Below are positions 6,535-53,062 of a stretch of 64,000 nt of DNA, in pieces. The stretch's first letter is position 1. Every line of letters starts with the position of its first letter. The DNA comes from Dendrobates tinctorius (taxonomy: Eukaryota), in NCBI RefSeq assembly GCF_039654945.1, contig NW_027361724.1:13454001-13518000 (forward strand), in the 5' to 3' direction. A model generated the notes under the pieces. It did no database searches. It had not been told where the DNA came from and saw only the letters and a program-made list of their open reading frames with translations. A program made the translations under genes and the position numbers.

Positions 6535-8200
6535 CGCCAGCGATCGCCGCATAGATCGCACCCCAGCAGCAGCGATCGCCGCATAGATCGCACACCAGCA
6601 GCAGCGATCGCCCTATAGATCGCACACCAGCAGCAGCGATCGCCCTATAGATCGCACACCAGCAGCAGCGATCGCCCTATAGATCGCACACCAGCAGCAG
6701 CGATCGCCCTATAGATCGCACACCAGCAGCAGCGATCGCCCTATAGATCGCACACCAGCAGCAGCGATCGCCCTATAGATCGCACACCAGCAGCAGCGAT
6801 CGCCCTATAGATCGCACACCAGCAGCAGCGATCGCCCTATAGATCGCACACCAGCAGCAGCGATCGCCCTATAGATCGCACACCAGCAGCAGCGATCGCC
6901 CTATAGATCGCACACCAGCAGCAGCGATCGCCCTATAGATCGCACACCAGCAGCAGCGATCGCCCTATAGATCGCACACCAGCAGCAGCGATCGCCCTAT
7001 AGATCGCACACAGCAGCAGCGATCGCCCTATAGATCGCACACAGCAGCAGCGATCGCCCTATAGATCGCACACAGCAGCAGTGATCGCCCTATAGATCGC
7101 ACACAGCAGCAGTGATCGCCCTATAGATCGCACACAGCAGCAGTGATCGCCCTATAGATCGCACACAGCAGCAGTGATCGCCCTATAGATCGCACACAGC
7201 AGCAGCGATCGCCCTATAGATCGCACACCAGCAGCAGCGATCGCCCTATAGATCGCACACCAGCAGCAGCGATCGCCCTATAGATCGCACACCAGCAGCA
7301 GCGATCGCCCTATAGATCGCACACCAGCAGCAGCGATCGCCCTATAGATCGCACACCAGCAGCAGCGATCGCCCTATAGATCGCACACCAGCAGCAGCGA
7401 TCGCCCTATAGATCGCACACCAGCAGCAGCGATCGCCCTATAGATCGCACACCAGCAGCAGCGATCGCCCTATAGATCGCACACCAGCAGCAGCGATCGC
7501 CCTATAGATCGCACACCAGCAGCAGCGATCGCCCTATAGATCGCACACCAGCAGCAGCGATCGCCCTATAGATCGCACACCAGCAGCAGCGATCGCCCTA
7601 TAGATCGCACACAGCAGCAGCGATCGCCCTATAGATCGCACACAGCAGCAGTGATCGCCCTATAGATCGCACACAGCAGCAGTGATCGCCCTATAGATCG
7701 CACACAGCAGCAGTGATCGCCCTATAGATCGCACACAGCAGCAGTGATCGCCCTATAGATCGCACACAGCAGCAGTGATCGCCCTATAGATCGCACACAG
7801 CAGCAGTGATCGCCCTATAGATCGCACACAGCAGCAGTGATCGCCCTATAGATCGCACACAGCAGCAGTGATCGCCCTATAGATCGCACACAGCAGCAGT
7901 GATCGCCGTATAAGATGGCACACAACAGTGATCGCCGTATAGATCGCACACCAGCAGCAGCGATCGCCGTATAGATCGCACACAGCAGCAGCGATCGCCG
8001 TATAGATCGCACACAGCAGCAGCGATCGCCGTATAGATCGCACACAGCAGCAGCGATCGCCGTATAAGATGGCACACAACAGTGATCGCCGTATAGATCG
8101 CACACAGCAGCAGCGATCGCCGTATAGATCGCACACAACAGTGATCGCCCTATAGATCGCACACAGCAGCAGTGATCGCCGTACAGATCGCACACAGCAG
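6535..8200. repeat. 31/32-bp CpG-rich minisatellite in NCKAP1 intron 1
   Basis: Unit ATAGATCGCACA(C)CAGCAGCAG(C/T)GATCGCCCT, about 50 copies. Confidence 0.97.
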
Positions 8201-8643: not shown

Positions 8644-8990
8644 GCTGCCTCTGTCCTCCTAGCACCGGAGCTGTCCCAGGCCTCGCACGGAGGGAGAAGC
8701 GGCGTTGTCGTTCTTCAGGGCCGGTAGGCGGGGGGCTGTTGTTATGGAGGGGGGACCCTCATACACATCCCATGCCCCGCAGGTTAACGCGATGACACGC
8801 CTGCCTGGCAGCCGCCGTCCAGCACCACCCTTCCTGCCGAATGTGGGCGGCGCCATCCAGAGCCACGCCCCTGTTCCAATCGCCCATGGAGAAGGAATCG
8901 GGATCCCGCGCATGCGCGTCTCTGCGACCGAGTCTGCGGCTGTGGAGTAGTCACAGTGCCCGCGGATGGCGGTGGGGACTGTGCGTACTG
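8644..8990 (-). promoter_or_regulatory. NCKAP1 5' UTR / CpG-island promoter
   Basis: GC/CpG-rich; NRF1 palindrome GCGCATGCGC at 8908-8917; CCAAT at 8876-8880. Confidence 0.65.
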
Positions 8991-11900
8991 TGCTGCCGAG
9001 ACACAGAGCGCTGCCGAGATATATAGTGCTGCCGAGGTATATAGTGCTGCCGAGATACATAGCGCTGCCGAGGTATATAGTGTTGCCGAGATACATAGAG
9101 TGCTGCCGAGATACATAGAGTGCTGCCGAGATATATAGTGCTGCCGAGATACATAGAAAGTGCTCAGAGATACATAAATAGTGCTGCCGAGATACATAGA
9201 GTGCTGCCGAGATACATAGAGTGCTGCCGAGATACATAGAGTGCTGCCGAGATATAGAGTGCTGCCGAGATACATAGAGTGCTGCCGAGATACATAGAGT
9301 GCTGCCGAGATATATAGTGCTGCCGAGATACATAGAAAGTGCGCAGAGATACATAAATAGTGCTGCCGAAATACATAGTGCTGCCGAGATACATAGAGTG
9401 CTGCCGAGATATATGGTGCTGCCGAGATATATAGTGCTGCCGAGATACATAGTGCTGCCGAGATATAGAGTGCTGCCGAGATATAAAGTGCTGCCGAGAT
9501 ATATAGTGCTGCCGAGATACATAGAAAGTGCTCAGAGATACATAAATAGTGCTGCCGAAATACATAGAGTGCTGCCGAGATATATAGTGCTGCCGAGATA
9601 CATAGAAAGTGCGCAGAGATACATAAATAGTGCTGCCGAAATACATAGTGCTGCCGAGATACATAGAGTGCTGCCGAGATATATAGTGCTGCCGAGATAT
9701 ATAGTGCTGCCGAGATACATAGTGCTGCCGAGATATAAAGTGCTGCCGAGATATATAGTGCTGCCGAGATACATAGAAAGTGCGCAGAGATACATAAATA
9801 GTGCTGCCGAAATACATAGTGCTGCCGAGATACATAGAGTGCTGCCGAGATATATAGTGCTGCCGAGATATATAGTGCTGCCGAGATACATAGTGCTGCC
9901 GAGATATAGAGTGCTGCCGAGATATAAAGTGCTGCCGAGATATATAGTGCTGCCGAGATATATAGAAAGTGCTCAGAGATACATAAATAGTGCTGCCGAG
10001 ATACATAGAGTGCTGCCGAGATACATAGAGTGCTGCCGAGATATATAGTGCTGCCGAGATACATAGAAAGTGCGCAGAGATACATAAATAGTGCTGCCGA
10101 AATACATAGAGTGCTGCCGAGATATATAGAGTGCTGCCGAGATACATAGAGTGCTGCCGAGATATATAGTGCTGCCGAGATACATAGAAAGTGCGCAGAG
10201 ATATATAAATAGTGCTGCCGAAATACATAGAGTGCTGCCGAGATATAGAGTGCTGCCGAGATATAGAGTGCTGCCGAGATATATAGTGCTGCCAAGATAC
10301 ATAGAGTGCTGCCGAGATACATAGAGTGCTGCCGAGATATATAGTGCTGCCGAGATACATAGAGTGCTGCCGAGATATATAGTGCTGCCGAGATACATAG
10401 AGTGCTGCCGAGATATAGAGTGCTGCCGAGATATAGAGTGCTGCCGAGATACATAGAGTGCTGCCGAGATATATAGTGCTGCCGAGATATAGAGTGCTGC
10501 CGTGATACATAGAGAGTGCCGCGGAGATACATAAATAGTGCTGCCAAAATAGAGCATGCTGCCGAAATACATAGTGCTGCCGAGATACATAGAGTGCTGC
10601 CGAGATACATAGAGTGCTGCCGAGATATATAGTGCTGCCGAGATACATAGAGTGCTGCCGGGATACATAAAGTGCTGCCGAGATACATAGAGTGCTGCCG
10701 AGATATATAGTGCTGCCGTGATACATAGAGAGTGCCGCGGAGATACATAAATAGTGCTGCCAAAATAGAGCATGCTGCCGAAATACATACAGTGCTGCCG
10801 AGATACATAGAGTGCTGCCGAGATATATAGTGCTGCCGAGATACATAGAGTGCTGCTGAGATATATAGTGCTGCCGAGATACATAGAGTGCTGCCGAGAT
10901 ACATAGAGTGGTGCCGAGATAGAGTGCTGCCGAGATATATAGTGCTGCCGTGATACATAGAGAGTGCCGCGGAGATACATAAATAGTGCTGCCAAAATAG
11001 AGCATGCTTCCGAAATACATAGTGCTGCCGAGATATATAGTGCTGCCGAGATACATAGAGTGCTGCTGAGATATATAGTGCTGCCGAGATACATAGAGTG
11101 CTGCTGAGATATATAGTGCTGCCGAGATACATAGAGTGCTGCCGAGATACATAGAGTGCTGCCGAGATATATAGTGCTGCCGTGATACATAGAGAGTGCC
11201 GCGGAGATACATAAATAGTGCTGCCAAAATAGAGCATGCTGCCGAGATACATAGAGTGCTGCCGAGATATATAGTGCTGCCGAGATACATAGAGTGCTGC
11301 TGAGATATATAGTGCTGCCGAGATACATAGAGTGCTGCTGAGATATATAGTGCTGCCGAGATACATAGAGTGCTGCCGAGATACATAGAGTGCTGCCGAG
11401 ATATATAGTGCTGCTGAGATATATAGTGCTGCCGAGATACATAGAGTGCTGCTGAGATATATAGTGCTGCCGAGATACATAGAGTGCTGCCGAGATACAT
11501 AGAGTGCTGCCGAGATATATAGTGCTGCCGTGATACATAGAGAGTGCCGCGGAGATACATAAATAGTGCTGCCAAAATAGAGCATGCTGCCGAGATACAT
11601 AGAGTGCTGCCGAGATATGTAGTGCTGCCGAGATACATAGAGTGCTGCTGAGATATATAGTGCTGCCGAGATACATAGAGTGCTGCTGAGATATATAGTG
11701 CTGCCGAGATACATAGAGTGCTGCCGAGATACATAGAGTGCTGCCGAGATTTATAGTGCTGCCGAGATAGAGTGCTGCTGAGATATATAGTGCTGCCGAG
11801 ATACATAGAGTGCTGCTGAGATATATAGTGCTGCCGAGATACATAGAGTGCTGCCGAGATACATAGAGTGCTGCCGAGATATATAGTGCTGCCGTGATAC

Positions 11901-13450
11901 ATAGAGAGTGCCGCGGAGATACATAAATAGTGCTGCCAAAATAGAGCATGCTGCCGAAATACATAGTGCTGTCGAGATATATAGATAGTGCTGCCAAAAT
12001 ACATAGATAGTGCTGCCGAGATACATAGATAGTGGTGCTGAAATACATAGAGTGCTACCAAGATATACAGTGCTGCCGAGATACATAGAGAGTGCCGCGG
12101 AGATACATAAATAGTGCTGCCAAAATACAGAGATAGTGCTGCCGAGATATATAAATAGTGCTGCCAAAATACATAGAGTGCTGCCAAGATACATAAATAG
12201 TGCTGCCGAAATAGAGCATGCTGCCGAAATACATAGTGCTGTCGAGATATATAGATAGTGCTCCCGAAATACATAGATAGTGCTGCCAAGATATAGAGTG
12301 CTGCCAAGATACATAGATAGTGGTGCTGAAATACATAGTGCTGCCGAAATACATAGAGAGTGCTGCCGAGATACATAGTGCTGCCGAGATATATAGAGTG
12401 CTGCCAAGATATATAGTGCTGCCGAGATACATAGAGAGTGCCGCGGGGATACATAAATAGTGCTGCCAAAATACAGAGATAGTGCTGCCGAGATATATAA
12501 ATAGTGCTGCCGAGATACATAGATAGTGCTGCCGAAATACATAGAGAGTGCTGCCAAGATACATAAATAGTGCTGCCAAAATAGAGCATGCTGCCGAAAT
12601 ACATAGTGCTGTCGAGATATATAGATAGTACTCCCGAAATACATAGATAGTGCTGCCGAGATATAGAGTGCTGCCAAGATACATAGATAGTGGTGCTGAA
12701 ATACATAGTGCTGCCAAAATACATAGTGCTGCCGAGATACATAGTGCTGCCGAGATACATAGAGTGCTGCCAAGATATATAGTGCTGCCGAGATATATAG
12801 AGAGTGCCGCGGAGATACATAAATAGTGCTGCCAAAATACAGAGATAGTGCTGCCGAGATATATAAATAGTGCTGCCGAGATACATAGATAGTGCTGCCG
12901 AAATACATAGAGTGCTGCCAAGATACATAAATAGTGCTGCCGAAATAGAGCATGCTGCCGAAATACATAGTGCTGTCGAGATATATAGATAGTGCTCCCG
13001 AAATACATAGATAGTGCTGCCGAGATATAGAGTGCTGCCAAGATGCATAGATAGTGCTGCTGAAATACATAGATAGTGCTGCCGAAATACATAGATAGTG
13101 CTGCTGAGATACATAGATCGTGCTGCCGAAATAGAGTGCTACCGAAATACATAGTGCTGCCAAAATAGAGAGTGCTACTGAGATACATAGAGACTGCTGC
13201 CGAGATACATAGAGAGTGCTGCCGAAATACATAGATAGTGCTGCCAAAATAGATGAATAGTGTTGCCGAGATACATGGATAGTGCTGCCGAGATACATAG
13301 TGCTGCCGAAATACATACATAGTGCTGCCGAAATACAAAGATAGTCCTGCCGAGTTACATAGATAGTGCTGCCGACGTACATAGTGCTGCCACGATATAT
13401 AGATATTATTGTGGAGATTGCCGATGCTGCCGAAATAGATAGTGCTCCTG
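8990..13450. repeat. 18/20-bp minisatellite, about 4.4 kb, with higher-order variants
   Basis: Core GTGCTGCCGAGATA(C/T)ATA(GA) repeated more than 200 times, diverging toward 13450. Confidence 0.97.
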
Positions 13451-22258: not shown

Positions 22259-22554
22259 GGGTATGTGCACACTTTGCGGTTTCTGCTGCGTTGTACAGTA
22301 CCTTTATTTCCTATGGAAATAAAAAAAAGCTGTGCACATGCTGCGTTTTTTTCCGTGCGGTTTTGCTGCGGTTTTCAAAACGCAGCATGTCAATTGTTTG
22401 GTGCAGAAACGCTGCAGTTTTACACCTCATCCATTATGAGGTGTAAAACCGCAGGGAAAAACCTCAGATAAACCGCAGGTCTTTGTCCTGCGGATTTACC
22501 TGCGGTTTTCTCTACAAAATCCGCAGAGACAAAAAAACTATGTGTGCACATACC
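22259..22554. mobile_element. Harbinger-type MITE
   Basis: GGGTATGTGCACAC ... GTGTGCACATACCC TIRs. Confidence 0.75.
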
Positions 22555-32511: not shown

Positions 32512-33284
32512 GCTGACGGGCCTGCTCCGTCCGCCCACAGGGTACGGGCTGCCACGCACCCTGCTGACGGGCCTGCTCCGTCCGCTCACAGGGTACGGGC
32601 TGCCACGCACCCTGCTGACGGGCCTGCTCCGTCCGCTCACAGGGTACGGGCTGCCACGCACCCTGCTGACGGGCCTGCTCCGTCCGCTCACAGGGTACGG
32701 GCTGCCACGCACCCTGCTGACGGGCCTGCTCCGTCCGCTCACAGGGTACGGGCTGCCACGCACCCTGCTGACGGGCATGCTCCGTCCGCTCACAGGGTAC
32801 GGGCTGCCACGCACCCTGCTGACGGGCCTGCTCCGTCCGCTCACAGGGTACGGGCTGCCACGCACCCTGCTGACGGGCCTGCTCCGTCCGCTCACAGGGT
32901 ACGGGCTGCCACGCACCCTGCTGACGGGCCTGCTCCGTCCGCTCACAGGGTACGGGCTGCCACGCACCCTGCTGACGGGCCTGCTCCGTCCGCTCACAGG
33001 GTACGGGCTGCCACGCACCCTGCTGACGGGCCTGCTCCGTCCGCTCACAGGGTACGGGCTGCCACGCACCCTGCTGACGGGCCTGCTCCGTCCGCTCACA
33101 GGGTACGGGCTGCCACGCACCCTGCTGACGGGCCTGCTCCGTCCGCTCACAGGGTACGGGCTGCCACGCACCCTGCTGACGGGCCTGCTCCGTCCGCTCA
33201 CAGGGTACGGGCTGCCACGCACCCTGCTGACGGGCCTGCTCCGTCCGCTCACAGGGTACGGGCTGCCACGCACCCTGCTGACGG
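32512..33284. repeat. 51-bp GC-rich minisatellite in NUP35 intron 1
   Basis: Unit GCTGACGGGCCTGCTCCGTCCGCTCACAGGGTACGGGCTGCCACGCACCCT, about 15 almost identical copies. Confidence 0.97.
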
Positions 33285-36857: not shown

Positions 36858-37463
36858 GTAAATTATATTTTTTTCAATTATTTAAAAACTAACCTCCTTA
36901 AACTTTGTATGCTTTGGTTGCTGTCAGGTTTTTATCTTTATGGAGCCCTGGCTTGGCGTACATTCACATGACCACTGCAGCCAGTCACTGGCCGCAGTGG
37001 TGATAGAATGAATCTGCCACTCATCTGCTGAGAATGATTGGCTGCACTGGTCCCTTCATCAAAGACTGGCATAGACCACCGAAGCATCGATACTGAAGTG
37101 TATGGTGGTTTTAATTATTAAATGTTTGTTTTACTACAGAAAACTTCCTTGGCTCATGTTCTCACTCGGCCTCAGTACTGTTTTGTGTGGGTATTTATTT
37201 ATTTTTTTTCATATGGGAACTTGGCATTTAAGCCTCAGTATGAACTCCAATTTAAATTGAATAAAGAAATGTCCCACTGGACAAAAAGAACCTAGATAAC
37301 ATCTGAAGATGCCAGTGGATCCAATGGCAAAATATATGATGTCTGAACACAAAATAAAATACAAAAAACATAATGACAAGACGTAAAACCATGGACGGAC
37401 ACAGCACATATAATATAGAAAATAAATAGGGGCCATAGAGGAGGGTAATATTGAGTAATTTAA

Positions 37464-37784
37464 GGCTATGTGCACATGCAGCGGATTCTTCTGTGGATCC
37501 ACAGCATATTTGGCCCTGCTAATCAGTAGCAGATCCACAGACATTGTTCAATACAATGTTAGCCAATGGGATTTCAAATCCGCAGTGCACATGCTGTGGA
37601 TTTTTCCACGTGGATTTGCTGCCGTTTTAAATCCGCAGCATGTCAATTCTTCAGATTCCACAGCGGTTTGACACCTGTTCCATTGTCAATCCACAGGGGA
37701 AAACCGCTGACAAATCCGCAGGTCACTTTACCTGCCGTTTTACCTGCAAATACGCAGGTGAATCCGCAATTTGTGCACTCGCCC
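37464..37784. mobile_element. Harbinger-type MITE
   Basis: GGCTATGTGCACA ... TGTGCACTCGCCC with TAA flanks. Confidence 0.65.
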
Positions 37785-41234: not shown

Positions 41235-41630
41235 GTTAGGGTTGGAATAAGGGTTAGGGTTGGAATAAGGGTTAGGGTTGGAATAAGGGTTAGGGTTGGA
41301 ATAAGGGTTAGGGTTGGAATAAGGGTTAGGGTTGGAATAAGGGTTAGGGTTGGAATAAGGGTTAGGGTTGGAATAAGGGTTAGGGTTGGAATAAGGGTTA
41401 GGGTTGGAATAAGGGTTAGGGTTGGAATAAGGGTTAGGGTTGGAATAAGGGTTAAAATTAGGGTTGGAATTGGGGTTAAAATTAGGGTTAGGGCTGGAAT
41501 TGGGGTTAGGGCTGGGTTGGGATTAGGGTTAGGCTTGTAGTTAGGGTTAGAGTTGGGATTAGGGTTAGGGGTGTGTTGGCGTTAGGGCTGTGGTTAGGGT
41601 TATTATTAGGGTGGGGTTAGGGTTGGAGTT
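41235..41630 (+). repeat. Telomere-like repeat array inside the piggyBac-like element
   Basis: About 12 copies of TTAGGG-TTGGAA-TAAGGG, then degenerate TTAGGG variants. Confidence 0.92.
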
Positions 41631-41639
41631 AGAATTGAG

Positions 41640-43600
41640 GGGTTTCCACTGTTTAGGCACATCACGGGGTCTCCGAGCGCGACATGGCGCCACGATTTAT
41701 TCCAGCCAATTTTGCGTTCAAAATGTCAAACAGCGCACTCTCCAATCCGAGCCCCGACGTGTGCCCAAACAGTGGTTTACCCCCACATATGGGGTATCAG
41801 CGTACTCAGGAAAAATTGCACAACAACTTTGGGGGTCTAATTTCTCCTGTTACCCTTGGGAAAATAAAAAATTGGGGGCTAAAAAAATGATTTTTGTGGA
41901 AAAAAAAGTTTTTTTGTTTTCACGGCTCTGAGTTATAAACTTCGGTGAAGCACTTGGGGGTTCAAAGTGCTCATCAAACATCTAGATAAGTTCCTTGGGG
42001 GGTCTAGTTTCCAAAATGGGGTCACTTGTGGGGGGTTTCCACTGTTTAGGCACATCAGGGGCTCTGCAAACGTAACATGACGCCCGCAGACCATTCCATC
42101 AAGTCGGTATTTCAAAACGTCACTACTTCCCTTCCGAGCCCCGATGTGTGCCCAAACAGTGGTCCCCCCCCCCCCCACATATGGGGTACCAGCGTACTCA
42201 GGACAAACTGGACAACAACTTTTGGGGTCCAATTTCTCCTGTTACTATTGTGAAAATAAAAAATAGCGGGCTAAAAAATCATTTTTGAGGAAAAAAAATG
42301 ATTTTTTATTTTCATGGCTCTGCATTTATAAACTTCTGTGAAGCACTTGGGGGTTCAAAGTGCTCACTACACATCTAGATAAGCTCCTTGGGGGGTCTAG
42401 TTTCCAAAATGGGGTCACTTGTGGGGGGTTTCTACTGTTTAGGCACATCAGGGGCTCTGCAAACGCAACATGATGCCCGCAGAACATCCCATCAGTCTGC
42501 ATTCCAAAATTGCGCTCCTTCCCTTCTGAGCTCTCCCATGCGCCCAAACAGTGGTTTCCCCTGACACATGGGGTATCGGTGTACTCAGGACAAATTACAC
42601 AACTTTTGTGGTCCAATTTCTCCTGTTAGCCTTGTGAAAATAAAAAATAGCGGGCTAAAATCATTTTTGAGGAAAAAAAAATATTTTTTTTATTTTCACT
42701 TTTCTGCATCATAAACTTCTGTGAAGCACTTGTGGGTTCAAAGTCCTCACCACACATCTAGAAAAGTTCCTTGGGTGGTCTAGTTTCCAAAATGGGGTCA
42801 CTTGTGGGGGAGCTCTAATGTTTAGGCACACAGGGGCTCTCCAAACACGACATGGTGTCCACTAACGATTGGAGCTAATTTTCCATTCAAAAAGTCAAAT
42901 GGTGCTCCTTCCCTTCGGGACCCTGCCGTGTGCCCAAACAGTGGTTTATGAGCACATATGAGGTATCTGTGCACTCAGGAGAAATTGCCCAACAAATTTT
43001 AGGATCCATTTTATCCCATTGCCCATGTGAAAATGAAAAAACTGAGGCTAAAAGAATTTTTGTGAAAGTGTTTTTTTTTTTTTTTTTTTTTTTGATCAAT
43101 TTGTGAAGCACCTGGCGGTTCAAAGTGCTCACTATGCATCTAAATAAGTTCCTTGGAGAGTCTAGTTTCCAAAATGGGGTCACTTGTGGGGTAGCTCCAA
43201 TGTTTAGGCGCACAGGGACTCTCCAAACGCGACATGGCAACCGCTAAATATTCCAGCATATTTTCCATTCAAAGTGTCAAATGGCGTTCCTTCCCTTCTG
43301 AGCCCTGCCGTGCGCCCAAACAGTGGTTTATGACCACATATGAGGTATCTGTGTACTCAGGAGAAATTGCCCAACAAATTTTAGGATCCATTTTATCCTG
43401 TTGCCCATGTGAAAATGAAAAAATTGATGCTAAAAAAATTTTTTTATTGGAAAAATTAAAATGTTCATTTTTTTTCCTTCCACATTGCTTTAGTTGCTGT
43501 GAAGCACCTGAAGGGTTAATAATCTTCTTGAATATAGTTTTGAGTAGCTTGAGGGGTGCAGTTTTTAGAATGGTGTCACTTTGGGGTATTTTCTGCCATA
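41640..43600. repeat. ~390-bp tandem repeat, about 5 copies, inside the piggyBac-like element
   Basis: Anchor TCTAGTTTCCAAAATGGGGTCACTTGTGGGG recurs near 42003, 42396, 42779 and 43161, with a diverged copy near 43560. Confidence 0.88.
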
Positions 43601-45351: not shown

Positions 45352-46917
45352 AAAGTCTGTGTATTTAAATGGCTAAATTCCCATCCTGTACATGCGGTGG
45401 AGAACGGTGACTCTATTCACGTCTTGCATGTGGCCACCAGGTGTCCTTCTTGTAATGTGAGGAATATCTCTTTATTTATTAGTCTTGTCTGATAGTGACT
45501 GCAAGCTTAGGTCCTAAAGAAATGTGGCCATTTCCTCACAGCGGCACATGCTGGATGGAAAGTTTTCAGCAGATTACTTCATGTATTTTGTGCTAACATT
45601 TCAATGTTGCACTTTAAACCACGCCATCTCCCATGTAAAGCCCTCCCTTAAGCAAAGCAAAAATGTGATGCACTGTATGTACGACCTCTTATGATGTGGC
45701 ACTTGGTACAACTTACACTTGCTCTGTAAATCTTTTTCTTAGGTAAACAGACTAAGGCTGTGTGCACACGCTGTGGATTTTGCTGCGGTTCCGCAGCGGT
45801 TTTGGCCACTGCGGACCCGCAGCAGTTTCTGCTGCGGTGTACAGTACAATGATTCCCTATGGGAATCAAAAACCGCAGTGCAGACGGTGCGGAATTTTCC
45901 GCGCGGATTATCTGCGGTTTTCAATCCGCAGAAAGAATTGACATGTCAATTCTTTCTGCGGATTCTCCTGCGGTTTGCCATCTCCTCCATTGAGGAGATG
46001 AAAAACCGCAGGGCAAAACCGCAGAGCAATCCGCAGGTAAAACCGCAGGTCTTTTGACCTGAGAAAACAGAAAGCAAAAAACACAAATATCCTGAACTAA
46101 AAGTAAAAAATATACTGCAAATAATGCATAAAGGTAATAATAAGGGTATTTAGTAAACATAATTTTGATCAAAATAATGTACAAGCCATCCCGCCACGGC
46201 AACCCTTGTGGGACAGTCCCTACTCTAGTATTTAAAACCTTATCACTTGCCAAGTGGCGTGAATGTGAATAAGGGTCGAGCGGCTGAACCACTTGTAACA
46301 GCTTAGGCCAGACTGGATGGCTTTCCCAGCTCAGAAAAAGGGTGGTCACACCCCTATATGCACTGAATGCACAATGAAATGAATAAAAAACAAATCTGAA
46401 CTGAGACAAGTAAGTTAATGTGTATGCACAATGTAAGTGCATTTTAACACATGACCATTAACCAGAGAAAACAGAAAGCAAAAAGATGGATTTTTGGTTC
46501 TTACCATAAAATCTCTTTCTTGGAGCCTTCATTGGGGGACAGAGATTACCATGGGTGTATGCTGCTGCTGCTAGGAGGCTGACACTATGCAAAAAACAAG
46601 AAAATTGACTCCTCCCCGGCAGTATACACCCACCGACAGATACCAAGTACCTCAGTTGGTGAGAAAGCAGTAGGAGAAGCAACGGAACTATAACATATGT
46701 ACCAACCCAACAAGGGACTCAAGGACCCAACACGGTACAACTTAAACAGGGAGGGTGCTGTGTCCCCCAATGAAGGCTCCAAGAAAGAGATTTTACGGTA
46801 AGAACCAAAAATCCATCTTTCTTTATCGCCTTATTGGGGGACACAGATTACCATGGGACGTTCCAAAGCAGTCCCAAGGGCGGGAACAGCAATAAGGAAC
46901 GAAAGAACAGGAAGGGC

Positions 46918-47940
46918 TTAGGTCGGCCAATGCGCCACCGCCGCCTGCAGGACCTTCCTACCACCGACTGCATCAGACGAAGCCTGGGTATGAACCCTGT
47001 AGAACTTCGCGAACGTATGCAAGAACGACCAGGTCGCGGCCCTGCAAATTTGCAGATCCGAAGCCTGGTGTCGAACGACCCACGAAGCTGCCACCGCCCG
47101 GGTGGAGTGAGTTCTCACTCCCGGAGGCGGCCGTTTTTCCTGAAGACGGTATGCTTCCAGAATAGTAGAACGAATCCAGCGAGCGATCGTGGATTTGGAT
47201 GCCGGAAGCCCTTTCCGGTGACCAGAGATGACCAGCAATGAATCGGATTGACGAAGTGAAGCAGTCCTAGCGAGATAAACACGCAAGGCTCTAACAACGT
47301 CCAGTTTGAGGAGTGACTTCTCAAGAGGGTGAGAAGGAACAGGACAAAATGATGGAAGAACGATATCCTCGTTGATGTGGAAGGAGGATACCACCTTTGG
47401 GAGAAAAGAAGGAACGGGCCTGAGGACGACTTTATCCTGATGGAGTACCAGCTAAGGAGAACGACATGACAGGGCCGCTAATTCAGAAACTCTTCTGATG
47501 GATGTTATGGCAATCAGAAAGGTTACCTTCCATGAAAGAAAAGACAAAGGGATGTCCTGGATGGGCTCAAACGGCGCTTTTTTGGAGAGCGCTAAGAACG
47601 AGATTGAGATCCCACGGTTCTATCGGTGAATGATGAGGAGGGGCCACATGAGCGACTCCTTGGAGAAATGTCTTAACCTGCGGTAAAGAAGCGATCTTCC
47701 TTTGAAAAAGGATAAACAAAGCGGAAACCTGGCCCTTGAGGGTACTGAGAGACAGACTCGAATCTAAGCTAGGCTGGAGAAACCCAGAATGGACGGAATG
47801 GAAAAGGACATTGGAAAGACTCTTTTATCGTCGCACCAACGGAAAAAGGCCTTCCAATGCCTATGGTAGATGCGGGAAGAGGCTGGTTTCCTGGCTTTGA
47901 CCATCGTCTGAATCATCTGGTTGGAAAAAACCTGATTCTC
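46918..47940 (-). pseudogene. DIRS tyrosine recombinase (interrupted)
   Basis: LDVVRAL, IARWIR and HSTRAVAASW...TFAKFYR catalytic motifs in ORF 46918-47394; the upstream part has an in-frame stop and frameshifts. Confidence 0.88.
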
Positions 47941-49830
47941 TTAAGGTTGCGGCCTCAACGGCCATGCCGTTAAATTCAGAGACCGAGAAGTCTCGTGGTA
48001 AAGGGGGCCTTGTGAGAAAAGATCCGGACGGTCTGGAAGCCTCCAGGGGACGTCCGCGAGCATGTTCACCAGTTCCGCATACCAAGGCCTTCTTGGCCAG
48101 TCTGGAGCCACAAGAAACACTGGCACGCCTTCCGATTTTATCTTCTTGACCACTCTTGGGATCAAGGCAAGAGGTGGAAACAGATAAGGGAGTTGGAACT
48201 GGGACCACGGAATTACTAGGGCGTCGCAAGCGACGGTTAGAGGGTCCCTGGACCTGGCTACGAAACGCGGAACCTTGTGGCTCATCCGAGATGCCATGAG
48301 GTCGACATCCGGATAACCCCAGCACTGGCATATCTGATAGAAGACTGTGGAATGGAGAGACCATTCGCCTGGCGCTAGGCTTTGGCGACTCAGAAAGTCG
48401 GCTGCCCAGTTTTCCACCCCTGGAATGTGAACAGCGGAGATTGCTGGAACATACTGTTCTGCCCAGCGCAGTATCTTGGCCACTTCTGACATCACTTGGT
48501 TGCTGCGCGTGCCGCCATGATGGTTTATGTACTCCACAGCCATGGCGTTGTCCGACTGAATGCGAACCGGCTTGCTGACGAGAAGAGGTTGCCAGCAAAG
48601 AAGGGCCAGGAAGATTGTTCTGATTTCGAGAAGATTGATAGGGAGCAGAGCTTCCTGTGGATTCCAGCGTCCTTGGGCCGTTCTCTGATGGAAAACCGCT
48701 CCCCAACCTACCTAGGCTGGCATCGGTGGTAATGCCTTGCCACTGGAGCGGGAGGAAGGACCTCCCCTGGAGGACTGACGTAGGCATTGCCCACCAAGTC
48801 AGGGAATGCCTCACTCTGAGAGGGAGGAAAATGGGGCGGTCTAAAGACAACGTCGTCTTGTCCCAAGCTGAGAGGAGGGACAGCTGAAGGGGGCGAAGAT
48901 GAAACTGTGCAAAAGGCACTGCCTCCATGGAAGCCACCATCTTCCCCAGAACTTTCATGCAGAGCCGAAGGGGAATGGGCTTCGGCCGTTTGAGAGCTCG
49001 AATTTCTTTGGACAGAGACGCAAATTTTTCCCCTCGGAAGAAACACCCGGGCCAGATTCGTGTCGAATTCCATGCCTAGGAAGGTCAGACGCTGAGTGGG
49101 TCTGAGAATGGACTTTTCTTTGTTGACTAACCATCCGAGACGGCCGAGGGTATCCAGGGTTATGTGAAGACTCAGGAGACAGTCTTGACGGGACGAGCCT
49201 TTGAACAAGAGATCGTCCAGATAAGGGATGATGAGAATCCCCCTGGATCGAAGGATGGCCATGACCGTCACCATCACCTTCGTGAAAACACGGGGAGCAG
49301 AGGCTAGGCCGTGAATTGATAGTGATTTCCCTGAATCGCAAACCGAAGATATTTCTGATGTTGCAAACAAACAGGGATGTGAAGTTAAGCATCCCGTATG
49401 TTCACAGAGCAGAGGAATTCTCCGGGTTCCATTGAGGCTATCACTGATCGAAGAGACTCCATTTTGAAGTGGAGAATCTTCACATGGCGATTGAGCAACT
49501 TGAGGACCAGGATTGGTCGAAGGGTCCCGTCTTCTTTCAGGACTACAAAAAAATTTGAGTAGAACCCTGAAAACCGTTCGTCTGAGGGAACGGGGACAAT
49601 CACACCGGCGGAAAGAAGGGAGGAGACGGCTTGAAAGAAACCTGGAACGTGGGACCGCTGTCTTGGGGGTCGAGACAGGAAAAAACGTCTGTTTGGCTGG
49701 GAAGCAAATTCGATCTTGTATCCGTATGCGATGATTTCCCTGACCCAAGCATCGTCGACAACAGACAGCCAAGCGTCCGCAAAAAAGGAAAGTCTGCCTC
49801 CCACCCTGGAAAAACTTCCAGGTGGGGGTG
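47941..49830 (-). pseudogene. DIRS reverse transcriptase / RNase H / methyltransferase-like ORF (frameshifted)
   Basis: VGGRL, FYSNFFVV, HFKMESL, SAPRVFTK, PYLDDLL, TTDAS, HIPGVENWAADFLSR, DLMAS and YLFPP motifs are spread over several frames. Confidence 0.9.
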
Positions 49831-49849
49831 ACCCGTCACTTGGAGGAGA

Positions 49850-51234
49850 ACCTTGCTGGGTAGATTTTTCTGTGGACGAGAAGGCAGGAAAGGGCCTAAA
49901 CTGCCGGAAACCCTTTCTGTTAAAAAAGCGTTTTGGCCGAGACTGAGGGAGAGAAGTGCTCTTACCACCAGTGGCATCCAAAATTATTTGATCTAGCTTG
50001 GCTCCAAAGAGCCGAGAACCAAGGAAAGGCAGATTGGTAAGCGACTTTTTAGAGGTGGTATCTGCATTCCATGACCTTAGCCAAAGGACTCGGCGTATGG
50101 CTATTATGTTGCTGTTAGCCCTTGCTACGCACCCAGCCGCATCCAAAGAGGCGGCTAAGAGGTATTTACCCGCATGATTAATTTGAACCGCTAGATCTGC
50201 CAGCTCGTCCTGGAGAGCTGCCGCTAAGATGCCTCTGCGAAGAGTTTTTGCCCAAGCTGAAATGACTTTTGCCACCCAGGAGGAAGCGAAAATAGGACAG
50301 AGAGAGGCACCGGATGCCTCAAAAATGGACTTAGCCAGAGATTCTATCTGCCTGCCTGTTGGATCCTTAAGCGATGCCCTGTCCGGAAGGGATAGAACCG
50401 TCTTAGAGGCTATACGAGAGACGGGAGGATCCACCTCGGGGGCTTTGGTCCATTTTGTGAGCAGATCTACATCAAAGGGATACAGAACATCTAAGTACCT
50501 GCGGCCTGAAAAGCGTTGATCAGGGTGCTCCCAATGTTTGGTTAGAGTAGTATCGAACTCCTTGTGGTTTGAAAGGGTTCGGGATGGAGGCCTCGCTCGT
50601 TTAAATGGAACAGAACATTCCTGAGGAGGAGGTTCGTCCTGCTTAATTTCCAAGGTTTGGAAGATGGCAGAAAGAAGACTATCGACCATATTCCGCGTTT
50701 TAGATATATTATCTGCTTCTGAACTAGATCCCGATTGGGGATCGTCGTCAGAACTAGGGTCGTCCTCTGAAGACGGAGAAGGACACCTGGGAAAAGCCGA
50801 CGGGCCTAGCGAACTGGAAGACGAGCCAGACAGAACATGCTTCCTAGAAATCCTACTCGGCTTGTCCCTCTGAAGGTCGCGGTCAGGTGCGGATGACTCA
50901 CCCTGAGAGGCGGTCGGTGCACAGGTGGCTGTAGATAACTGAGGGGGTCGTCCTCCTAACGTTCTAGGACCTGGACCAGGGACTGAGAGACTTTAGTCAG
51001 ATCGAAGACCGACTGGGACATTGCAACGGCCCACTATGGGAGAGGGGAAGTGCCCTCATCCCGGGAATCGGTGTGCTCCTGAGAGGCCGACATAGCTGAA
51101 GGGCTGCAGGACAGGCAGAGGGGAGACGACTGACCTGACGCCCACTTCCTTTTACAGCGTGCACAAGCGTAGTGGATAACGGTGGGCTTGAAAGATAGCG
51201 CCGTTGAAGGGTTAAACATAGGTATGTTGAGCAC
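49850..51234 (-). pseudogene. DIRS gag-like ORF1 (frameshifted)
   Basis: N-terminal CxxC...CxxC segment (51034-51234), then PEVDPPVSRI, RRVLWLRSW, LPFLGSRLFG motifs typical of vertebrate DIRS ORF1. Confidence 0.8.
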
Positions 51235-52511
51235 TATGGCTGCACTAAAGGCTGCACTAAATAGTAGGGCTGCAGAGGAGAGACAATTTTTCCATTAAGC
51301 GCCGAGCCTACCGAAGTTCTGACGAGCTGGACCCTGACGTGTCCCCCAAGCAGCGCAGGAAGCCAGTGAAATTGCAGAAGGAAGCTGGCTGTGATCTCAG
51401 TGGGCGGTACGTGGCGTCGTGGCGACTAGGCAATGGCAGAGGAGGGGCGCGGTAAAAATGGAGATTGACATCCTTAAAAAGAAAGTAGCGCTGTGATTGG
51501 TGTGAAATGGGCGTGAGAAAAAAGCGCGCACAGAGTGGAAATTCACACCCAGAGAAAAGGGAGCGCGCTCAGAACAGGGAGGAGGGAGCGTGCTGAAAGT
51601 GAAACCGTGTCTCCCTCCCCGCCGAGCTCTTATACTGATGCCCGCGGCGCCGATAATAAAAGGTGAGCCTGCGTTGAACCACTGCTTACAAGGACCGTCC
51701 TAGTAGACCTTGTGTGCCTCTTTCCCTGATCCTAGTATAACCAGAGCGCGGCTGCGATGTGAGGCGCGCGGCTGCAGTGGGGGAGTAGAGGTGGGAAATT
51801 CAAAGTTTGAAACCACTGCTTGTGAAAACATACGGGGCTAAAGGGAACGTTCGGATCTTACCTGACGTCCCTGAAGAGGATGACCGCAGGGGCATGTATA
51901 GCAGACAGGCCGCTGGGAGAGGTCCTCTTACCCGTGTCACGTAGAAGACGGCGTCCTTTTGTTGGGAGCGATGGCGACTACCGTCTTCCTCTCAGCCCTG
52001 TCCTGGGATAGGGATGAGGAGTTGTTTTGCCAAGGACCGGCCACCTGTCGTCCGCCCATAGCACCGAATGGTGATATGGAAAAAGTCCTGCCTGCGGTAC
52101 TGAGAGTTGCGATGTGGGCGACACCACACTGCTCGCTCAGCCGCATGATATGGGAAAGCAGGGTGAACATTTACCCCCTGTTTCCCGATGTAGAATCTGG
52201 AAAATAAATGGGAAAAGATTAATACACACACAAAACCTAAAAGAAAATGGTTAGATGCGGATCTGGGGAGATCCCGGTCCGCCTCCTACAGACACTAAGC
52301 ACAAACTGAGGTACTTGGTATCTGTCGGTGGGTGTATACTGCCGGGGAGGAGTCAATTTTCTTGTTTTTTGCATAGTGTCAGCCTCCTAGCAGCAGCAGC
52401 ATACACCCATGGTAATCTGTGTCCCCAATAAGGCGATAAAGAAAACACAAATATCCTGAACTAAAAGTAAAAAATATACTGCAAATAATGCATAAAGGTA
52501 ATAATAATAAT

Positions 52512-52589
52512 AAGGGTATTTAGTAAACATAATTTTGATCAAAATAATGTACAAGCCATCCCGCCACGTCACGGCAACCCTTGTGGGAC
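52512..52589 (-). ncRNA. Candidate HDV-like self-cleaving ribozyme (variant fold)
   Basis: Manual fold: P1 GUCCC/GGGAU, P2 AAGGGU/ACCCUU, P3 GCC/GGC with a 7-nt loop GUGACGU, J1/4 GG, AU-rich P4 hairpin, J4/2 CUAA. P1 is short and L3 is non-canonical; untested. Confidence 0.45.
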
Positions 52590-53062
52590 TTTTGACCTGC
52601 GGATTGTACAAAATCCGTGCGGATGAATCCGCACCTAATCCACAGCGTGTGCACACAGCCTAACGGATCATTCAATTGTATAAATTCTGAGCTCTAGAAA
52701 CATAAGGAAAAATAGACACTCTTTGCATGGACTGACTTTCCATCACTACGATGGACCCATTTAACAACTTTGTGCAGCCAGCCAGGGTGTGGGCTTAGGA
52801 GCGGGGCGCTTTGCATCCATTGCAGTTGCTGGCTGTGGAATACAGCTGACCTTTCCTCCAACAGCAGTGACCGGATCTAGCTCTGATTGCTTAACCATTT
52901 AGAAGCCATGCCTATTGTCCTTTCATCTTGTGACATGATCACAAGGTGCCATTACAGATTCGATATCAAATTTTAAATCCCAATCTCTACGAATATAAAA
53001 TGCTATAGTGAAGAAAACAAATTAATGTACTGATATTTTTTTTTCTATCTTTACATGCACAG

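What the first reader, a model, noticed from the sequence alone, without database searches (positions are those of the whole stretch)
46061..52589. Candidate new retrozyme-like mobile RNA: 1.38 tandem copies of a 404-nt non-coding unit with a 9-11 bp TSD
Seen: an A-B-A insert (period 404 nt, A about 154 nt) with no credible ORF, TIRs, matched TG..CA ends, poly(A) tail or Pol III boxes, flanked by duplicated (C)TTTTGACCT(G). Established: partial-tandem inserts of 170-400 nt units are typical of animal non-LTR retrozymes, which make circular RNAs using type I hammerheads, and of Penelope pLTRs. Here no CTGANGA...GAAA core is visible on either strand; instead the unit holds an HDV-like fold whose first base is the insert's 5' end. 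Inference: a non-autonomous element copied from a multimeric or circular RNA by a borrowed reverse transcriptase. I know of no description of such a family in frogs but cannot search.
Basis: partly seen in the sequence, partly recalled or inferred. Interest (0 to 1): 0.88.

Follow-up and report, generated by a model that had tools for sequence, protein, structure and literature searches.

The report
Tandem-unit frog retroelement, ribozyme unproven
A 568-base non-coding insert made of 1.4 head-to-tail copies of a very abundant 404-base repeat, later split by a second jumping element, is a genuine reverse-transcribed insertion of the Penelope/retrozyme type, but the hepatitis-delta-like self-cutting RNA proposed at its end is a weak, untested drawing.

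Summary
The A-B-A insert is real. A1 is 46062-46214, B is 46215-46465, and A2 is 46466-46484 plus 52445-52589. It sits between 10-11 bp target duplications. Uninterrupted copies of the host repeat confirm the empty site.

The unit has no credible ORF, tRNA-like head, LTR hallmarks or hammerhead, and no Rfam ribozyme match on either strand. The family is very abundant in DNA contigs of the source species and is present in a second species.

Best reading: a non-autonomous tandem-unit retroelement, copied by target-primed reverse transcription from a linear multimeric transcript, most likely by a Penelope-like enzyme.

The HDV-like fold can be drawn only in the outer copy, which carries a 5-nt CACGT insert. 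It has a 5-bp P1 and no P1.1. It fits only a relaxed descriptor that 0.1-0.5% of window positions also fit.

Penelope-type initiation at a fixed internal site on the opposite strand would put an insert end at the same nucleotide, so end position cannot prove cleavage.

The scan has already noted similar tandem repeats with HDV-like folds elsewhere in this genome. I could not check whether they are related. Cleavage and circular RNA remain untested.

The parts
46051..46061 (.). Left target-site duplication, (C)TTTTGACCTG
   Evidence: It is identical to 52590-52599. Host-repeat copies at 22.3 kb and 37.6 kb carry one copy of the motif. Loose ends at 46061 in other contigs continue as the right flank does.
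46062..46214 (.). A1, first copy of the 153-nt repeated segment (short variant, without CACGT)
46215..46465 (.). B, the 251-nt unique segment. A1 plus B make the 404-nt unit.
   Evidence: It carries most of the family's variable positions (table 3).
46466..46484 (.). A2, first 19 nt, before the DIRS-like interruption
   Evidence: It is 100% identical to 46062-46080.
46485..52444 (-). Later insertion: a 5,960-bp DIRS-like retrotransposon, not part of the unit
   Evidence: Inverted terminal repeats lie at 46535-46661 and 52300-52426 (98%). An internal complementary region at 46758-46857 matches both ends. Minus-strand ORFs hit LAP2alpha (gag-like), RVT_1 and, weakly, Phage_integrase.
52445..52589 (.). 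A2, remaining 145 nt (long variant, with +TAATAA and +CACGT)
52590..52599 (.). Right target-site duplication, TTTTGACCTG
52512..52589 (-). HDV-like drawing in the long variant. P1 is GTCCC/GGGAT (5 bp, G1.U). P2 is AAGGGT/ACCCTT. P3 is GCC/GGC with a 7-nt L3. P4 is a 24-nt palindrome. J4/2 contains CUAA.
   Evidence: It fits only the relaxed descriptor.
46137..46214 (-). The same segment in the short variant. P3/L3 cannot form and no HDV-like solution exists.
   Evidence: The MFE is a nested three-way junction.
46054..46061 (.). Flank octamer TTGACCTG, similar to the unit's TTAACCAG (46458-46465), which precedes A2. This is junction microhomology.
   Evidence: family D5. Identity is 6 of 8, or 7 of 8 pairs if read as a DNA primer on minus-sense RNA.
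45756..46050 (.). Host element, left part: a Harbinger-like MITE with TAA duplication (45753-45755 and 52661-52663) and roughly 27-bp terminal inverted repeats
52600..52660 (.). Host MITE, right part

Best explanation
This is one insertion of a very abundant, non-coding, tandem-unit retroelement with a 404-nt unit.

A multimeric linear transcript, read from a genomic tandem array of the family, was copied into a nicked target inside a MITE hairpin by target-primed reverse transcription. The reverse transcriptase was borrowed, most likely from a Penelope-like element. Synthesis covered about 1.4 units, giving A-B-A, and staggered nicks gave the 10-11 bp duplication. Later a DIRS-like retrotransposon integrated into the second A.

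Shown: the insertion itself, the TSD, the partial tandem, the lack of coding capacity and hammerhead, the high copy number, and the pre-existing variants.

Inferred: the enzyme, the multimeric template, and the sense strand. The sense strand is unresolved.
- If plus is sense, the GGGAC end is a fixed internal RT start in an AC-rich hairpin, and the other end was joined by 8-nt microhomology.
- If minus is sense, the primer annealed to that microhomology, and GTCCCAC is the RNA 5' end.

No ribozyme is needed for either version.
For: - A-B-A with period 404 and near-identical A copies.
- TSD and empty site verified from other host-repeat copies.
- No ORF, tRNA, hammerhead or Rfam match.
- 6,370 contig pieces of one DNA run lie on the 651-nt stretch. 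Summed depth over the unit equals that of the flanking MITE. The family is also present in a second species.
- Contigs of other copies also bridge B into A (table 5c).
- Both the +CACGT and the short form, and TAATAA length variants, exist in the family in both species (table 4). The two A copies therefore probably come from two different units of one transcript.
- There is 6/8 microhomology at one junction; chance is roughly 0.5% per junction by my own binomial estimate.
- Literature: Penelope-like elements and their non-autonomous derivatives give partial tandems, variable TSDs and multimeric templates with a fixed internal RT start (PMC8557442, PMC11167929).
Against: - No autonomous partner sharing sequence with the unit was found; only this window could be searched.
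- The hammerhead typical of vertebrate Penelope pLTRs is absent.
- No 30-40 bp 'tail' was recognised.
- The distribution of family ends could not be measured, because other copies could not be fetched.
- The coincidence of the insert end with a relaxed HDV-like fold, and the low variation of that segment, are not used by this explanation.
Confidence: 0.6

Rival explanations
1. HDV-type retrozyme. The minus strand is the sense strand. Each competent unit carries an HDV-like ribozyme that cuts just 5' of GTCCCAC. The template RNA had its 5' end made by that cut. Monomers may be circularised by a host ligase, as in hammerhead retrozymes.
For: - The HDV helix order can be drawn starting at the first base (within 1 nt) of the insert. 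Only 0.09-0.55% of window positions fit the same relaxed descriptor.
- The cut (outer) copy carries the long L3 variant that allows P3. The uncut inner junction carries the short variant that cannot form P3.
- No common variant is listed between 46134 and 46226, which covers the drawn fold, while B has about 25 (table 3).
- The minus-strand unit folds better than shuffles: z is -3.7 against -2.0 for the plus strand.
- 7 of 8 primer-template pairs form at the 3' junction in this orientation (my own pairing count on the octamers, D5).
- Earlier notes of this scan report the same pattern at other loci. I did not check them.
Against: - P1 has only 5 contiguous pairs, there is no P1.1, and the candidate catalytic C lies 6 nt from P2. 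Descriptors asking for P1 of 6 bp or more, or for P1.1, fail.
- No Rfam HDV-like model scores even at E=10 on 171-451 nt slices.
- The short, incompetent form dominates by depth in the largest DNA run (table 4).
- A diverged subfamily seems to break the first P3 pair (table 7, a low-agreement consensus).
- The MFE prefers a nested three-way junction that uses P1's 3' strand.
- The descriptor was tuned after seeing the fold.
- No RNA run holds the element on record.
Confidence: 0.2
2. A LINE-mobilised, SINE-like element, or another non-Penelope TPRT passenger, whose partial tandem arose from read-through of a tandem source.
For: The TSD length and the junction microhomology are also typical of LINE-type TPRT.
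Against: There is no A-rich or microsatellite 3' tail at either end, and no Pol III head. Tandem or partial-tandem inserts are the hallmark of Penelope-type elements (PMC8557442).
Confidence: 0.12
3. A miniature LTR element (TRIM-like), with A as the LTR and B as the internal region.
For: The A-B-A layout has nearly identical A copies.
Against: - The TSD is 10-11 bp, not 4-6 bp.
- The ends are AG..AC, or GT..CT on the other strand, not TG..CA.
- No tRNA-complementary primer site or polypurine tract lies next to the repeats.
- Contigs of other copies join B to A again, as in longer arrays (table 5c).
Confidence: 0.03

Closest known systems
Animal non-LTR retrozymes (Cervera and de la Pena 2020, PMC7229834; Xenopus families in bioRxiv 10.64898/2026.07.22.740005)
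   Same: Non-coding 170-400-nt units in head-to-tail copies, low GC (about 38% here), TSDs longer than 4 bp, no LTR/PBS/PPT, very high copy number in amphibians, and a presumed Penelope-like helper.
   Different: No type I hammerhead on either strand, which is the defining feature. Circular or monomeric RNA has not been shown.
Non-autonomous Penelope-like derivatives forming pseudo-LTRs (for example MRC1/Chlamys and the hammerhead-less Naiads, PMC8557442)
   Same: Partial-tandem insertion (a truncated copy plus a full copy), variable TSD, no ORF, and the hammerhead can be absent.
   Different: Those are from algae and invertebrates. Here, no sequence link to an autonomous element could be tested and no 'tail' was seen.
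HDV-like ribozymes at the 5' ends of R2, RTE, L1Tc/NARTc and other non-LTR retrotransposons (PMC3774820, PMC3383444)
   Same: A double-pseudoknot helix order that starts at the first nucleotide of the inserted copy, with a G1.U first pair.
   Different: P1 is 5 bp rather than 6-7. There is no P1.1 and the spacing of the J4/2 cytosine is unusual. The fold is absent from the short variant, gives no covariance-model hit, and sits in a tandem-unit non-coding element rather than at the head of a LINE.
Penelope-like element PAc of Anolis: internal initiation of reverse transcription (PMC11167929)
   Same: A multimeric RNA template. [quoted passage not shown] Read on the plus strand, the GGGAC end here lies in such a hairpin and shows no homology to the target.
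   Different: That is an autonomous element with a hammerhead and an AT-rich cleavage motif. Correspondence here is by analogy only.

Membership tests
Animal non-LTR retrozyme | Head-to-tail non-coding units of about 170-400 nt with low GC | tested here: met
   404-nt unit, 1.4 copies, GC about 38%. Other copies also join B to A.
Animal non-LTR retrozyme | Type I hammerhead ribozyme in each unit | tested here: not met
   No CTGANGA core on either strand. No hammerhead model hit at E up to 10.
Animal non-LTR retrozyme | Abundant monomeric linear and circular RNA | not testable with these tools
   No listed holder is on record as RNA. All runs are kept as contigs, which cannot show ends or strand.
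Penelope-type (non-autonomous) insertion | Partial tandem forming a pseudo-LTR, 5' truncation, variable TSD of about 10 bp or more | tested here: met
   A-B-A with a 10-11 bp TSD verified against empty sites.
Penelope-type (non-autonomous) insertion | Sequence shared with the pLTR or 3' end of an autonomous RT/GIY-YIG element | not testable with these tools
   No other copy or partner lies in the 64-kb window. The genome itself cannot be searched. Earlier scan notes report many Penelope-like elements in this genome; I did not check them.
Penelope-type (non-autonomous) insertion | Hammerhead in the pLTR (canonical clades only) | tested here: not met
   This feature is not universal, since Naiad and Chlamys lack it (PMC8557442).
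HDV-like ribozyme | Nested double-pseudoknot helix order P1-P2-P3-P3'-P1'-P4-P2' from nucleotide +1 | tested here: inconclusive
   Met by the long variant at 52589 downward. Not met by the short variant at 46214 downward.
HDV-like ribozyme | P1 of 6-7 bp opening with G1.U | tested here: not met
   G1.U is present, but there are only 5 contiguous pairs. Extending to 7 needs an A.C mismatch and steals P3.
HDV-like ribozyme | Two-pair P1.1 between L3 and J1/4 | tested here: not met
   The descriptor with P1.1 fails.
HDV-like ribozyme | Catalytic C in J4/2 just before the P2 3' strand | tested here: inconclusive
   A CUAA is present, but the C lies 6 nt from P2 and 4 nt from P4 (read from the sequence).
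HDV-like ribozyme | Match to curated HDV-like covariance models | tested here: not met
   No such hit at E up to 10 in narrow scans of both copies.
HDV-like ribozyme | Self-cleavage, and covariation across copies | not testable with these tools
   Other copies could not be retrieved. Only a variant table from contigs is available.
LTR retrotransposon / TRIM | 4-6 bp TSD, TG..CA repeat ends, PBS and PPT | tested here: not met
   The TSD is 10-11 bp. The ends are AG..AC. There is no tRNA-complementary site and no purine tract at the junctions.
SINE | Pol III head (tRNA, 7SL or 5S) and a LINE-like 3' tail | tested here: not met
   ARAGORN finds nothing, there is no Rfam hit, and neither end has a tail repeat.

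The most novel reading that the evidence does not exclude
The family is a retrozyme that uses an HDV-like ribozyme instead of a hammerhead. Minus-strand multimers would be cut 5' of GTCCCAC by units carrying the long L3 variant and not by short-variant units. This locus would then record one such molecule: cut at its long-variant unit and uncut at its short-variant unit. Monomers may circularise.
Probability: 0.2. Interest if true: 0.8.

Novelty: new member of a known kind. Interest (0 to 1): 0.42.

Why it matters
As it stands, this is one more copy of an abundant amphibian-type tandem retroelement, nested in a MITE and hit by a DIRS element. That is ordinary genome archaeology.

It matters for two reasons.
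- The family shows that hammerhead-less, Penelope-style tandem passengers can reach very high copy number in a vertebrate. Hammerhead-based searches for 'retrozymes' would miss them.
- If the delta-type fold cuts, animal retrozymes would not be tied to one ribozyme class. This locus offers a natural matched pair, the long and short L3 variants, for a simple cleavage test.

The analysis also gives a caution for the scan's sister findings. An insert end that coincides with a predicted cleavage site is equally predicted by Penelope-type fixed internal initiation on the other strand.

Tried and rejected
- Rfam, at gathering threshold on the whole window and at E up to 10 on three slices. It gave no ribozyme, only hairpin-like microRNA noise in the host MITE.
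- Hammerhead core regex on both strands: nothing.
- tRNA scan: nothing.
- Other copies in the window: none.
- Fetching other copies from outside the window. A 20-mer scan of metagenome contigs gave two loci (L001, L002) that share only the 20-28-nt word and are chance hits. Scans of genome contigs and viral contigs gave nothing.
- Looking for predicted 'proteins' from other copies with the unit's 127-codon open frame: nothing.
- The 173-aa ORF crossing B, A1 and the flank: rejected as junk.
- A TATA-like TTTTAAATA lies 15-23 nt upstream of the inner GTCCCAC. That is too close for a standard TATA-to-start distance, so a transcription start at that base is only a weak alternative.
- The bacterial promoter/terminator scan is irrelevant here.
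- The 382-nt tandem array at 41.6-43.5 kb was checked as a possible relative. It is unrelated and has no ribozyme hit.
- Circular folding of the unit gives a moderately structured RNA (61% paired, z -2.9 on the minus strand), not a viroid-like rod.
- I did not verify the organism.


Full report
**Anatomy**

Reading 45800-52900 and the repeat finder give a clear layout.
- The sequence (C)TTTTGACCTG occurs at 46051/2-46061 and again at 52590-52599.
- Between the two lie A1 (46062-46214, 153 nt), B (46215-46465, 251 nt) and a second A.
- The second A starts at 46466 and breaks off after 19 nt at 46484. It resumes at 52445 and ends at 52589.
- A1 and the rejoined A2 differ only by a TAATAA and a CACGT insertion in A2, with no substitutions.
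- The period is 404 nt and the insert is 568 nt, or 1.4 units.

That stretch is a DIRS-like retrotransposon on the minus strand.
- It has 127-nt inverted terminal repeats (46535-46661 and 52300-52426, 98% identical).
- An internal region at 46758-46857 is complementary to both termini.
- Its minus-strand ORFs hit LAP2alpha (gag-like), RVT_1 and, weakly, a tyrosine recombinase.
- It has no TSD, as expected for this class.
- It arrived after the A-B-A insert and is not part of it.

**Is it a true insertion?**

Yes.
- The flanks belong to a roughly 367-bp Harbinger-like MITE (45756-52660 without its passengers). It has a TAA duplication and about 27-bp terminal inverted repeats.
- Two other copies in the window, at 22276-22513 and 37461-37747, run uninterrupted through one copy of the duplicated motif.
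- In public contigs, other host-repeat copies continue past 46061 with CGGATTT, as in the right flank after its TSD (52600 onward) (table 7).
- The empty site is a hairpin, CCGCAGGTC-TTTT-GACCTGCGG.

**What the unit lacks**

- There is no tRNA-like gene.
- There is no hammerhead core on either strand.
- No Rfam family matches, at gathering thresholds on the whole window or at E up to 10 on narrow slices of both copies.
- There are no TG..CA ends, no PBS or PPT, and no terminal A-rich or microsatellite tail.
- The one long ORF (173 aa, minus strand) runs from B through A1 into the MITE and is low-complexity.

**Family size**

The unit is held by 20 runs from 7 studies, in two species labels.
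- In one DNA run, 6,370 contig pieces lay on the stretch.
- Summed word depth over the unit was as high as over the MITE and the DIRS terminus.
- Other contigs also join the end of B to the start of A (table 5c), so head-to-tail units are a family trait.
- This copy differs from the majority letter at about six positions of B (table 3).
- Both the +CACGT form and the short form, and several TAATAA lengths, are present in the family in both species (table 4).

All runs are kept as contigs and none is on record as RNA, so expression, strand and RNA ends cannot be judged.

**Mechanism**

A 10-11 bp TSD, a non-coding partial tandem and very high copy number point to target-primed reverse transcription by a borrowed enzyme. 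The literature supports a Penelope-like helper.
- Penelope-like elements and their non-autonomous derivatives typically insert as a truncated copy followed by a full copy (a pseudo-LTR), with variable TSDs. Some clades lack hammerheads (PMC8557442).
- The Anolis element PAc uses multimeric RNA and starts reverse transcription at a fixed internal AC-rich stem-loop without homology to the target. This fixes one end of genomic copies (PMC11167929).
- Hammerhead retrozymes of Xenopus have been shown to be derivatives of Penelope pLTRs (bioRxiv 10.64898/2026.07.22.740005).

The two A copies here carry different, pre-existing family variants. The template was therefore more likely a linear read-through transcript of a heterogeneous array than a monomer circle copied by rolling-circle synthesis.

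**Which strand is sense?**

This is unresolved. The octamer before A1 in the flank (TTGACCTG) resembles the octamer before A2 in the unit (TTAACCAG) at 6 of 8 positions (D5). By my own binomial estimate, chance is about 0.5% per junction.

If minus is sense:
- This is primer-template annealing (7 of 8 pairs counting G.U) at the start of reverse transcription.
- GTCCCAC is then the RNA 5' end.

If plus is sense:
- The GGGAC end lies in the loop of a small hairpin after an AC-rich run and shows no homology to the target, as for PAc.
- The microhomology then served to join the 5' end.

Other evidence points both ways.
- The minus-strand unit folds somewhat better than shuffles: z is -3.7 against -2.0 when linear, and -2.9 against -2.3 when circular.
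- The plus strand is A-rich, as retroelement sense strands often are.

Both models predict insert ends piling up at the same nucleotide.

**The HDV-like fold**

From the outer end (52589 downward, minus strand) one can draw these helices:
- P1: GTCCC/GGGAT, with a G1.U pair.
- P2: AAGGGT/ACCCTT.
- P3: GCC/GGC, with a 7-nt L3.
- P4: a 24-nt palindrome.
- J4/2: contains CUAA.

They fall in the HDV order. Points in favour:
- A relaxed descriptor built on this drawing is met by 0.55% of all window positions. With G at +1 and a 6-bp P2, the figure is 0.09-0.16%.
- No common variant is listed between 46134 and 46226, the segment that holds the fold (table 3). Some rows of that table were not shown.
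- The outer, 'cut' copy has the long L3, while the inner, uncut junction has the short form that cannot make P3.

Points against:
- P1 has only five contiguous pairs.
- There is no P1.1.
- The cytosine is oddly spaced.
- Descriptors requiring P1 of 6 bp or more, or P1.1, fail.
- The short form yields no solution at all, and it dominates by depth in the largest DNA run (table 4).
- A diverged subfamily appears to lose a P3 pair (table 7, low agreement).
- The thermodynamic optimum for the first 80 nt is a plain three-way junction that uses P1's 3' strand.
- No Rfam HDV-like model responds.
- The descriptor was fitted after the fact.

I put the chance of a working ribozyme at about 0.2. The conserved, helix-rich block could equally be the RT recognition and initiation module.

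**Attempts to get other copies**

All failed.
- A 20-mer scan of metagenome contigs gave two chance hits.
- Scans of prokaryote genomes and viral contigs gave nothing.
- A protein-word search with the unit's open frame gave nothing.
- Covariation and end statistics therefore remain to be done on the assembly itself.

**Earlier notes of this scan**

Earlier notes describe tandem-unit repeats of 396, 418 and 540 bp elsewhere in the same genome. Follow-ups range from 'ribozyme does not hold up, ordinary Penelope-type insertion' to 'HDV-like fold, cutting untested'. They also report many Penelope-like elements. I could not compare sequences, so I treat these as leads only. They agree with the class assignment and slightly raise the prior for a delta-type fold.

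**Verdict**

- The mobile, partial-tandem, borrowed-RT interpretation is supported.
- Membership of the retrozymes fails on the defining hammerhead.
- Membership of the HDV-like ribozymes fails on P1 length and P1.1.
- A circular template is disfavoured.

It is best filed as a new member of the known kind of non-autonomous Penelope-type tandem retroelements, with a modest chance of being a ribozyme-swapped retrozyme.

Noticed in passing
window 46485-52444 (minus strand): A 5,960-bp DIRS-like retrotransposon with 127-nt inverted terminal repeats and an internal complementary region. It has gag-like (LAP2alpha), RT and weak tyrosine-recombinase hits. The RT-to-recombinase part is split over several frames, so the element is probably decayed. 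Contigs show that its terminus differs from the family majority at several positions.
   Followed up: partly
window 45756-46050 and 52600-52660; other copies at 22276-22513 and 37461-37747: The host is a roughly 367-bp Harbinger-like MITE with a TAA duplication, about 27-bp terminal inverted repeats and several CCGCAG-type hairpins. It is very abundant in the contigs. Its hairpins give sub-threshold microRNA-model hits (mir-4484, E 0.0005, far below gathering).
   Followed up: partly
window 41235-43510: Degenerate TTAGGG-like repeats (41235-41570) are directly followed by about 4.6-5 units of a 382-nt satellite that are 70-85% alike. It looks like an interstitial or subtelomeric-type array. 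It is unrelated to the 404-nt unit and has no Rfam ribozyme hit.
   Followed up: partly
window 6538-8200, 8990-13403, 32512-33284: Large minisatellites: 32 nt x 53 copies (97% matches), an 18/38-nt array of 4.4 kb, and 51 nt x 15 copies (99% matches). The 4.4-kb array produces spurious ORFs of up to 1,316 codons.
   Followed up: no
window 46229-46237 (minus strand, 15-23 nt upstream of the inner GTCCCAC): A TATA-like TTTTAAATA with no common variants listed. It is too close for a standard TATA-to-start spacing, but it could belong to an internal promoter of the unit.
   Followed up: no
window 46134 and 52499-52513: A (TAA)n run inside segment A is length-polymorphic across the family, with +6, +9 and +12 nt forms in different runs.
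   Followed up: no
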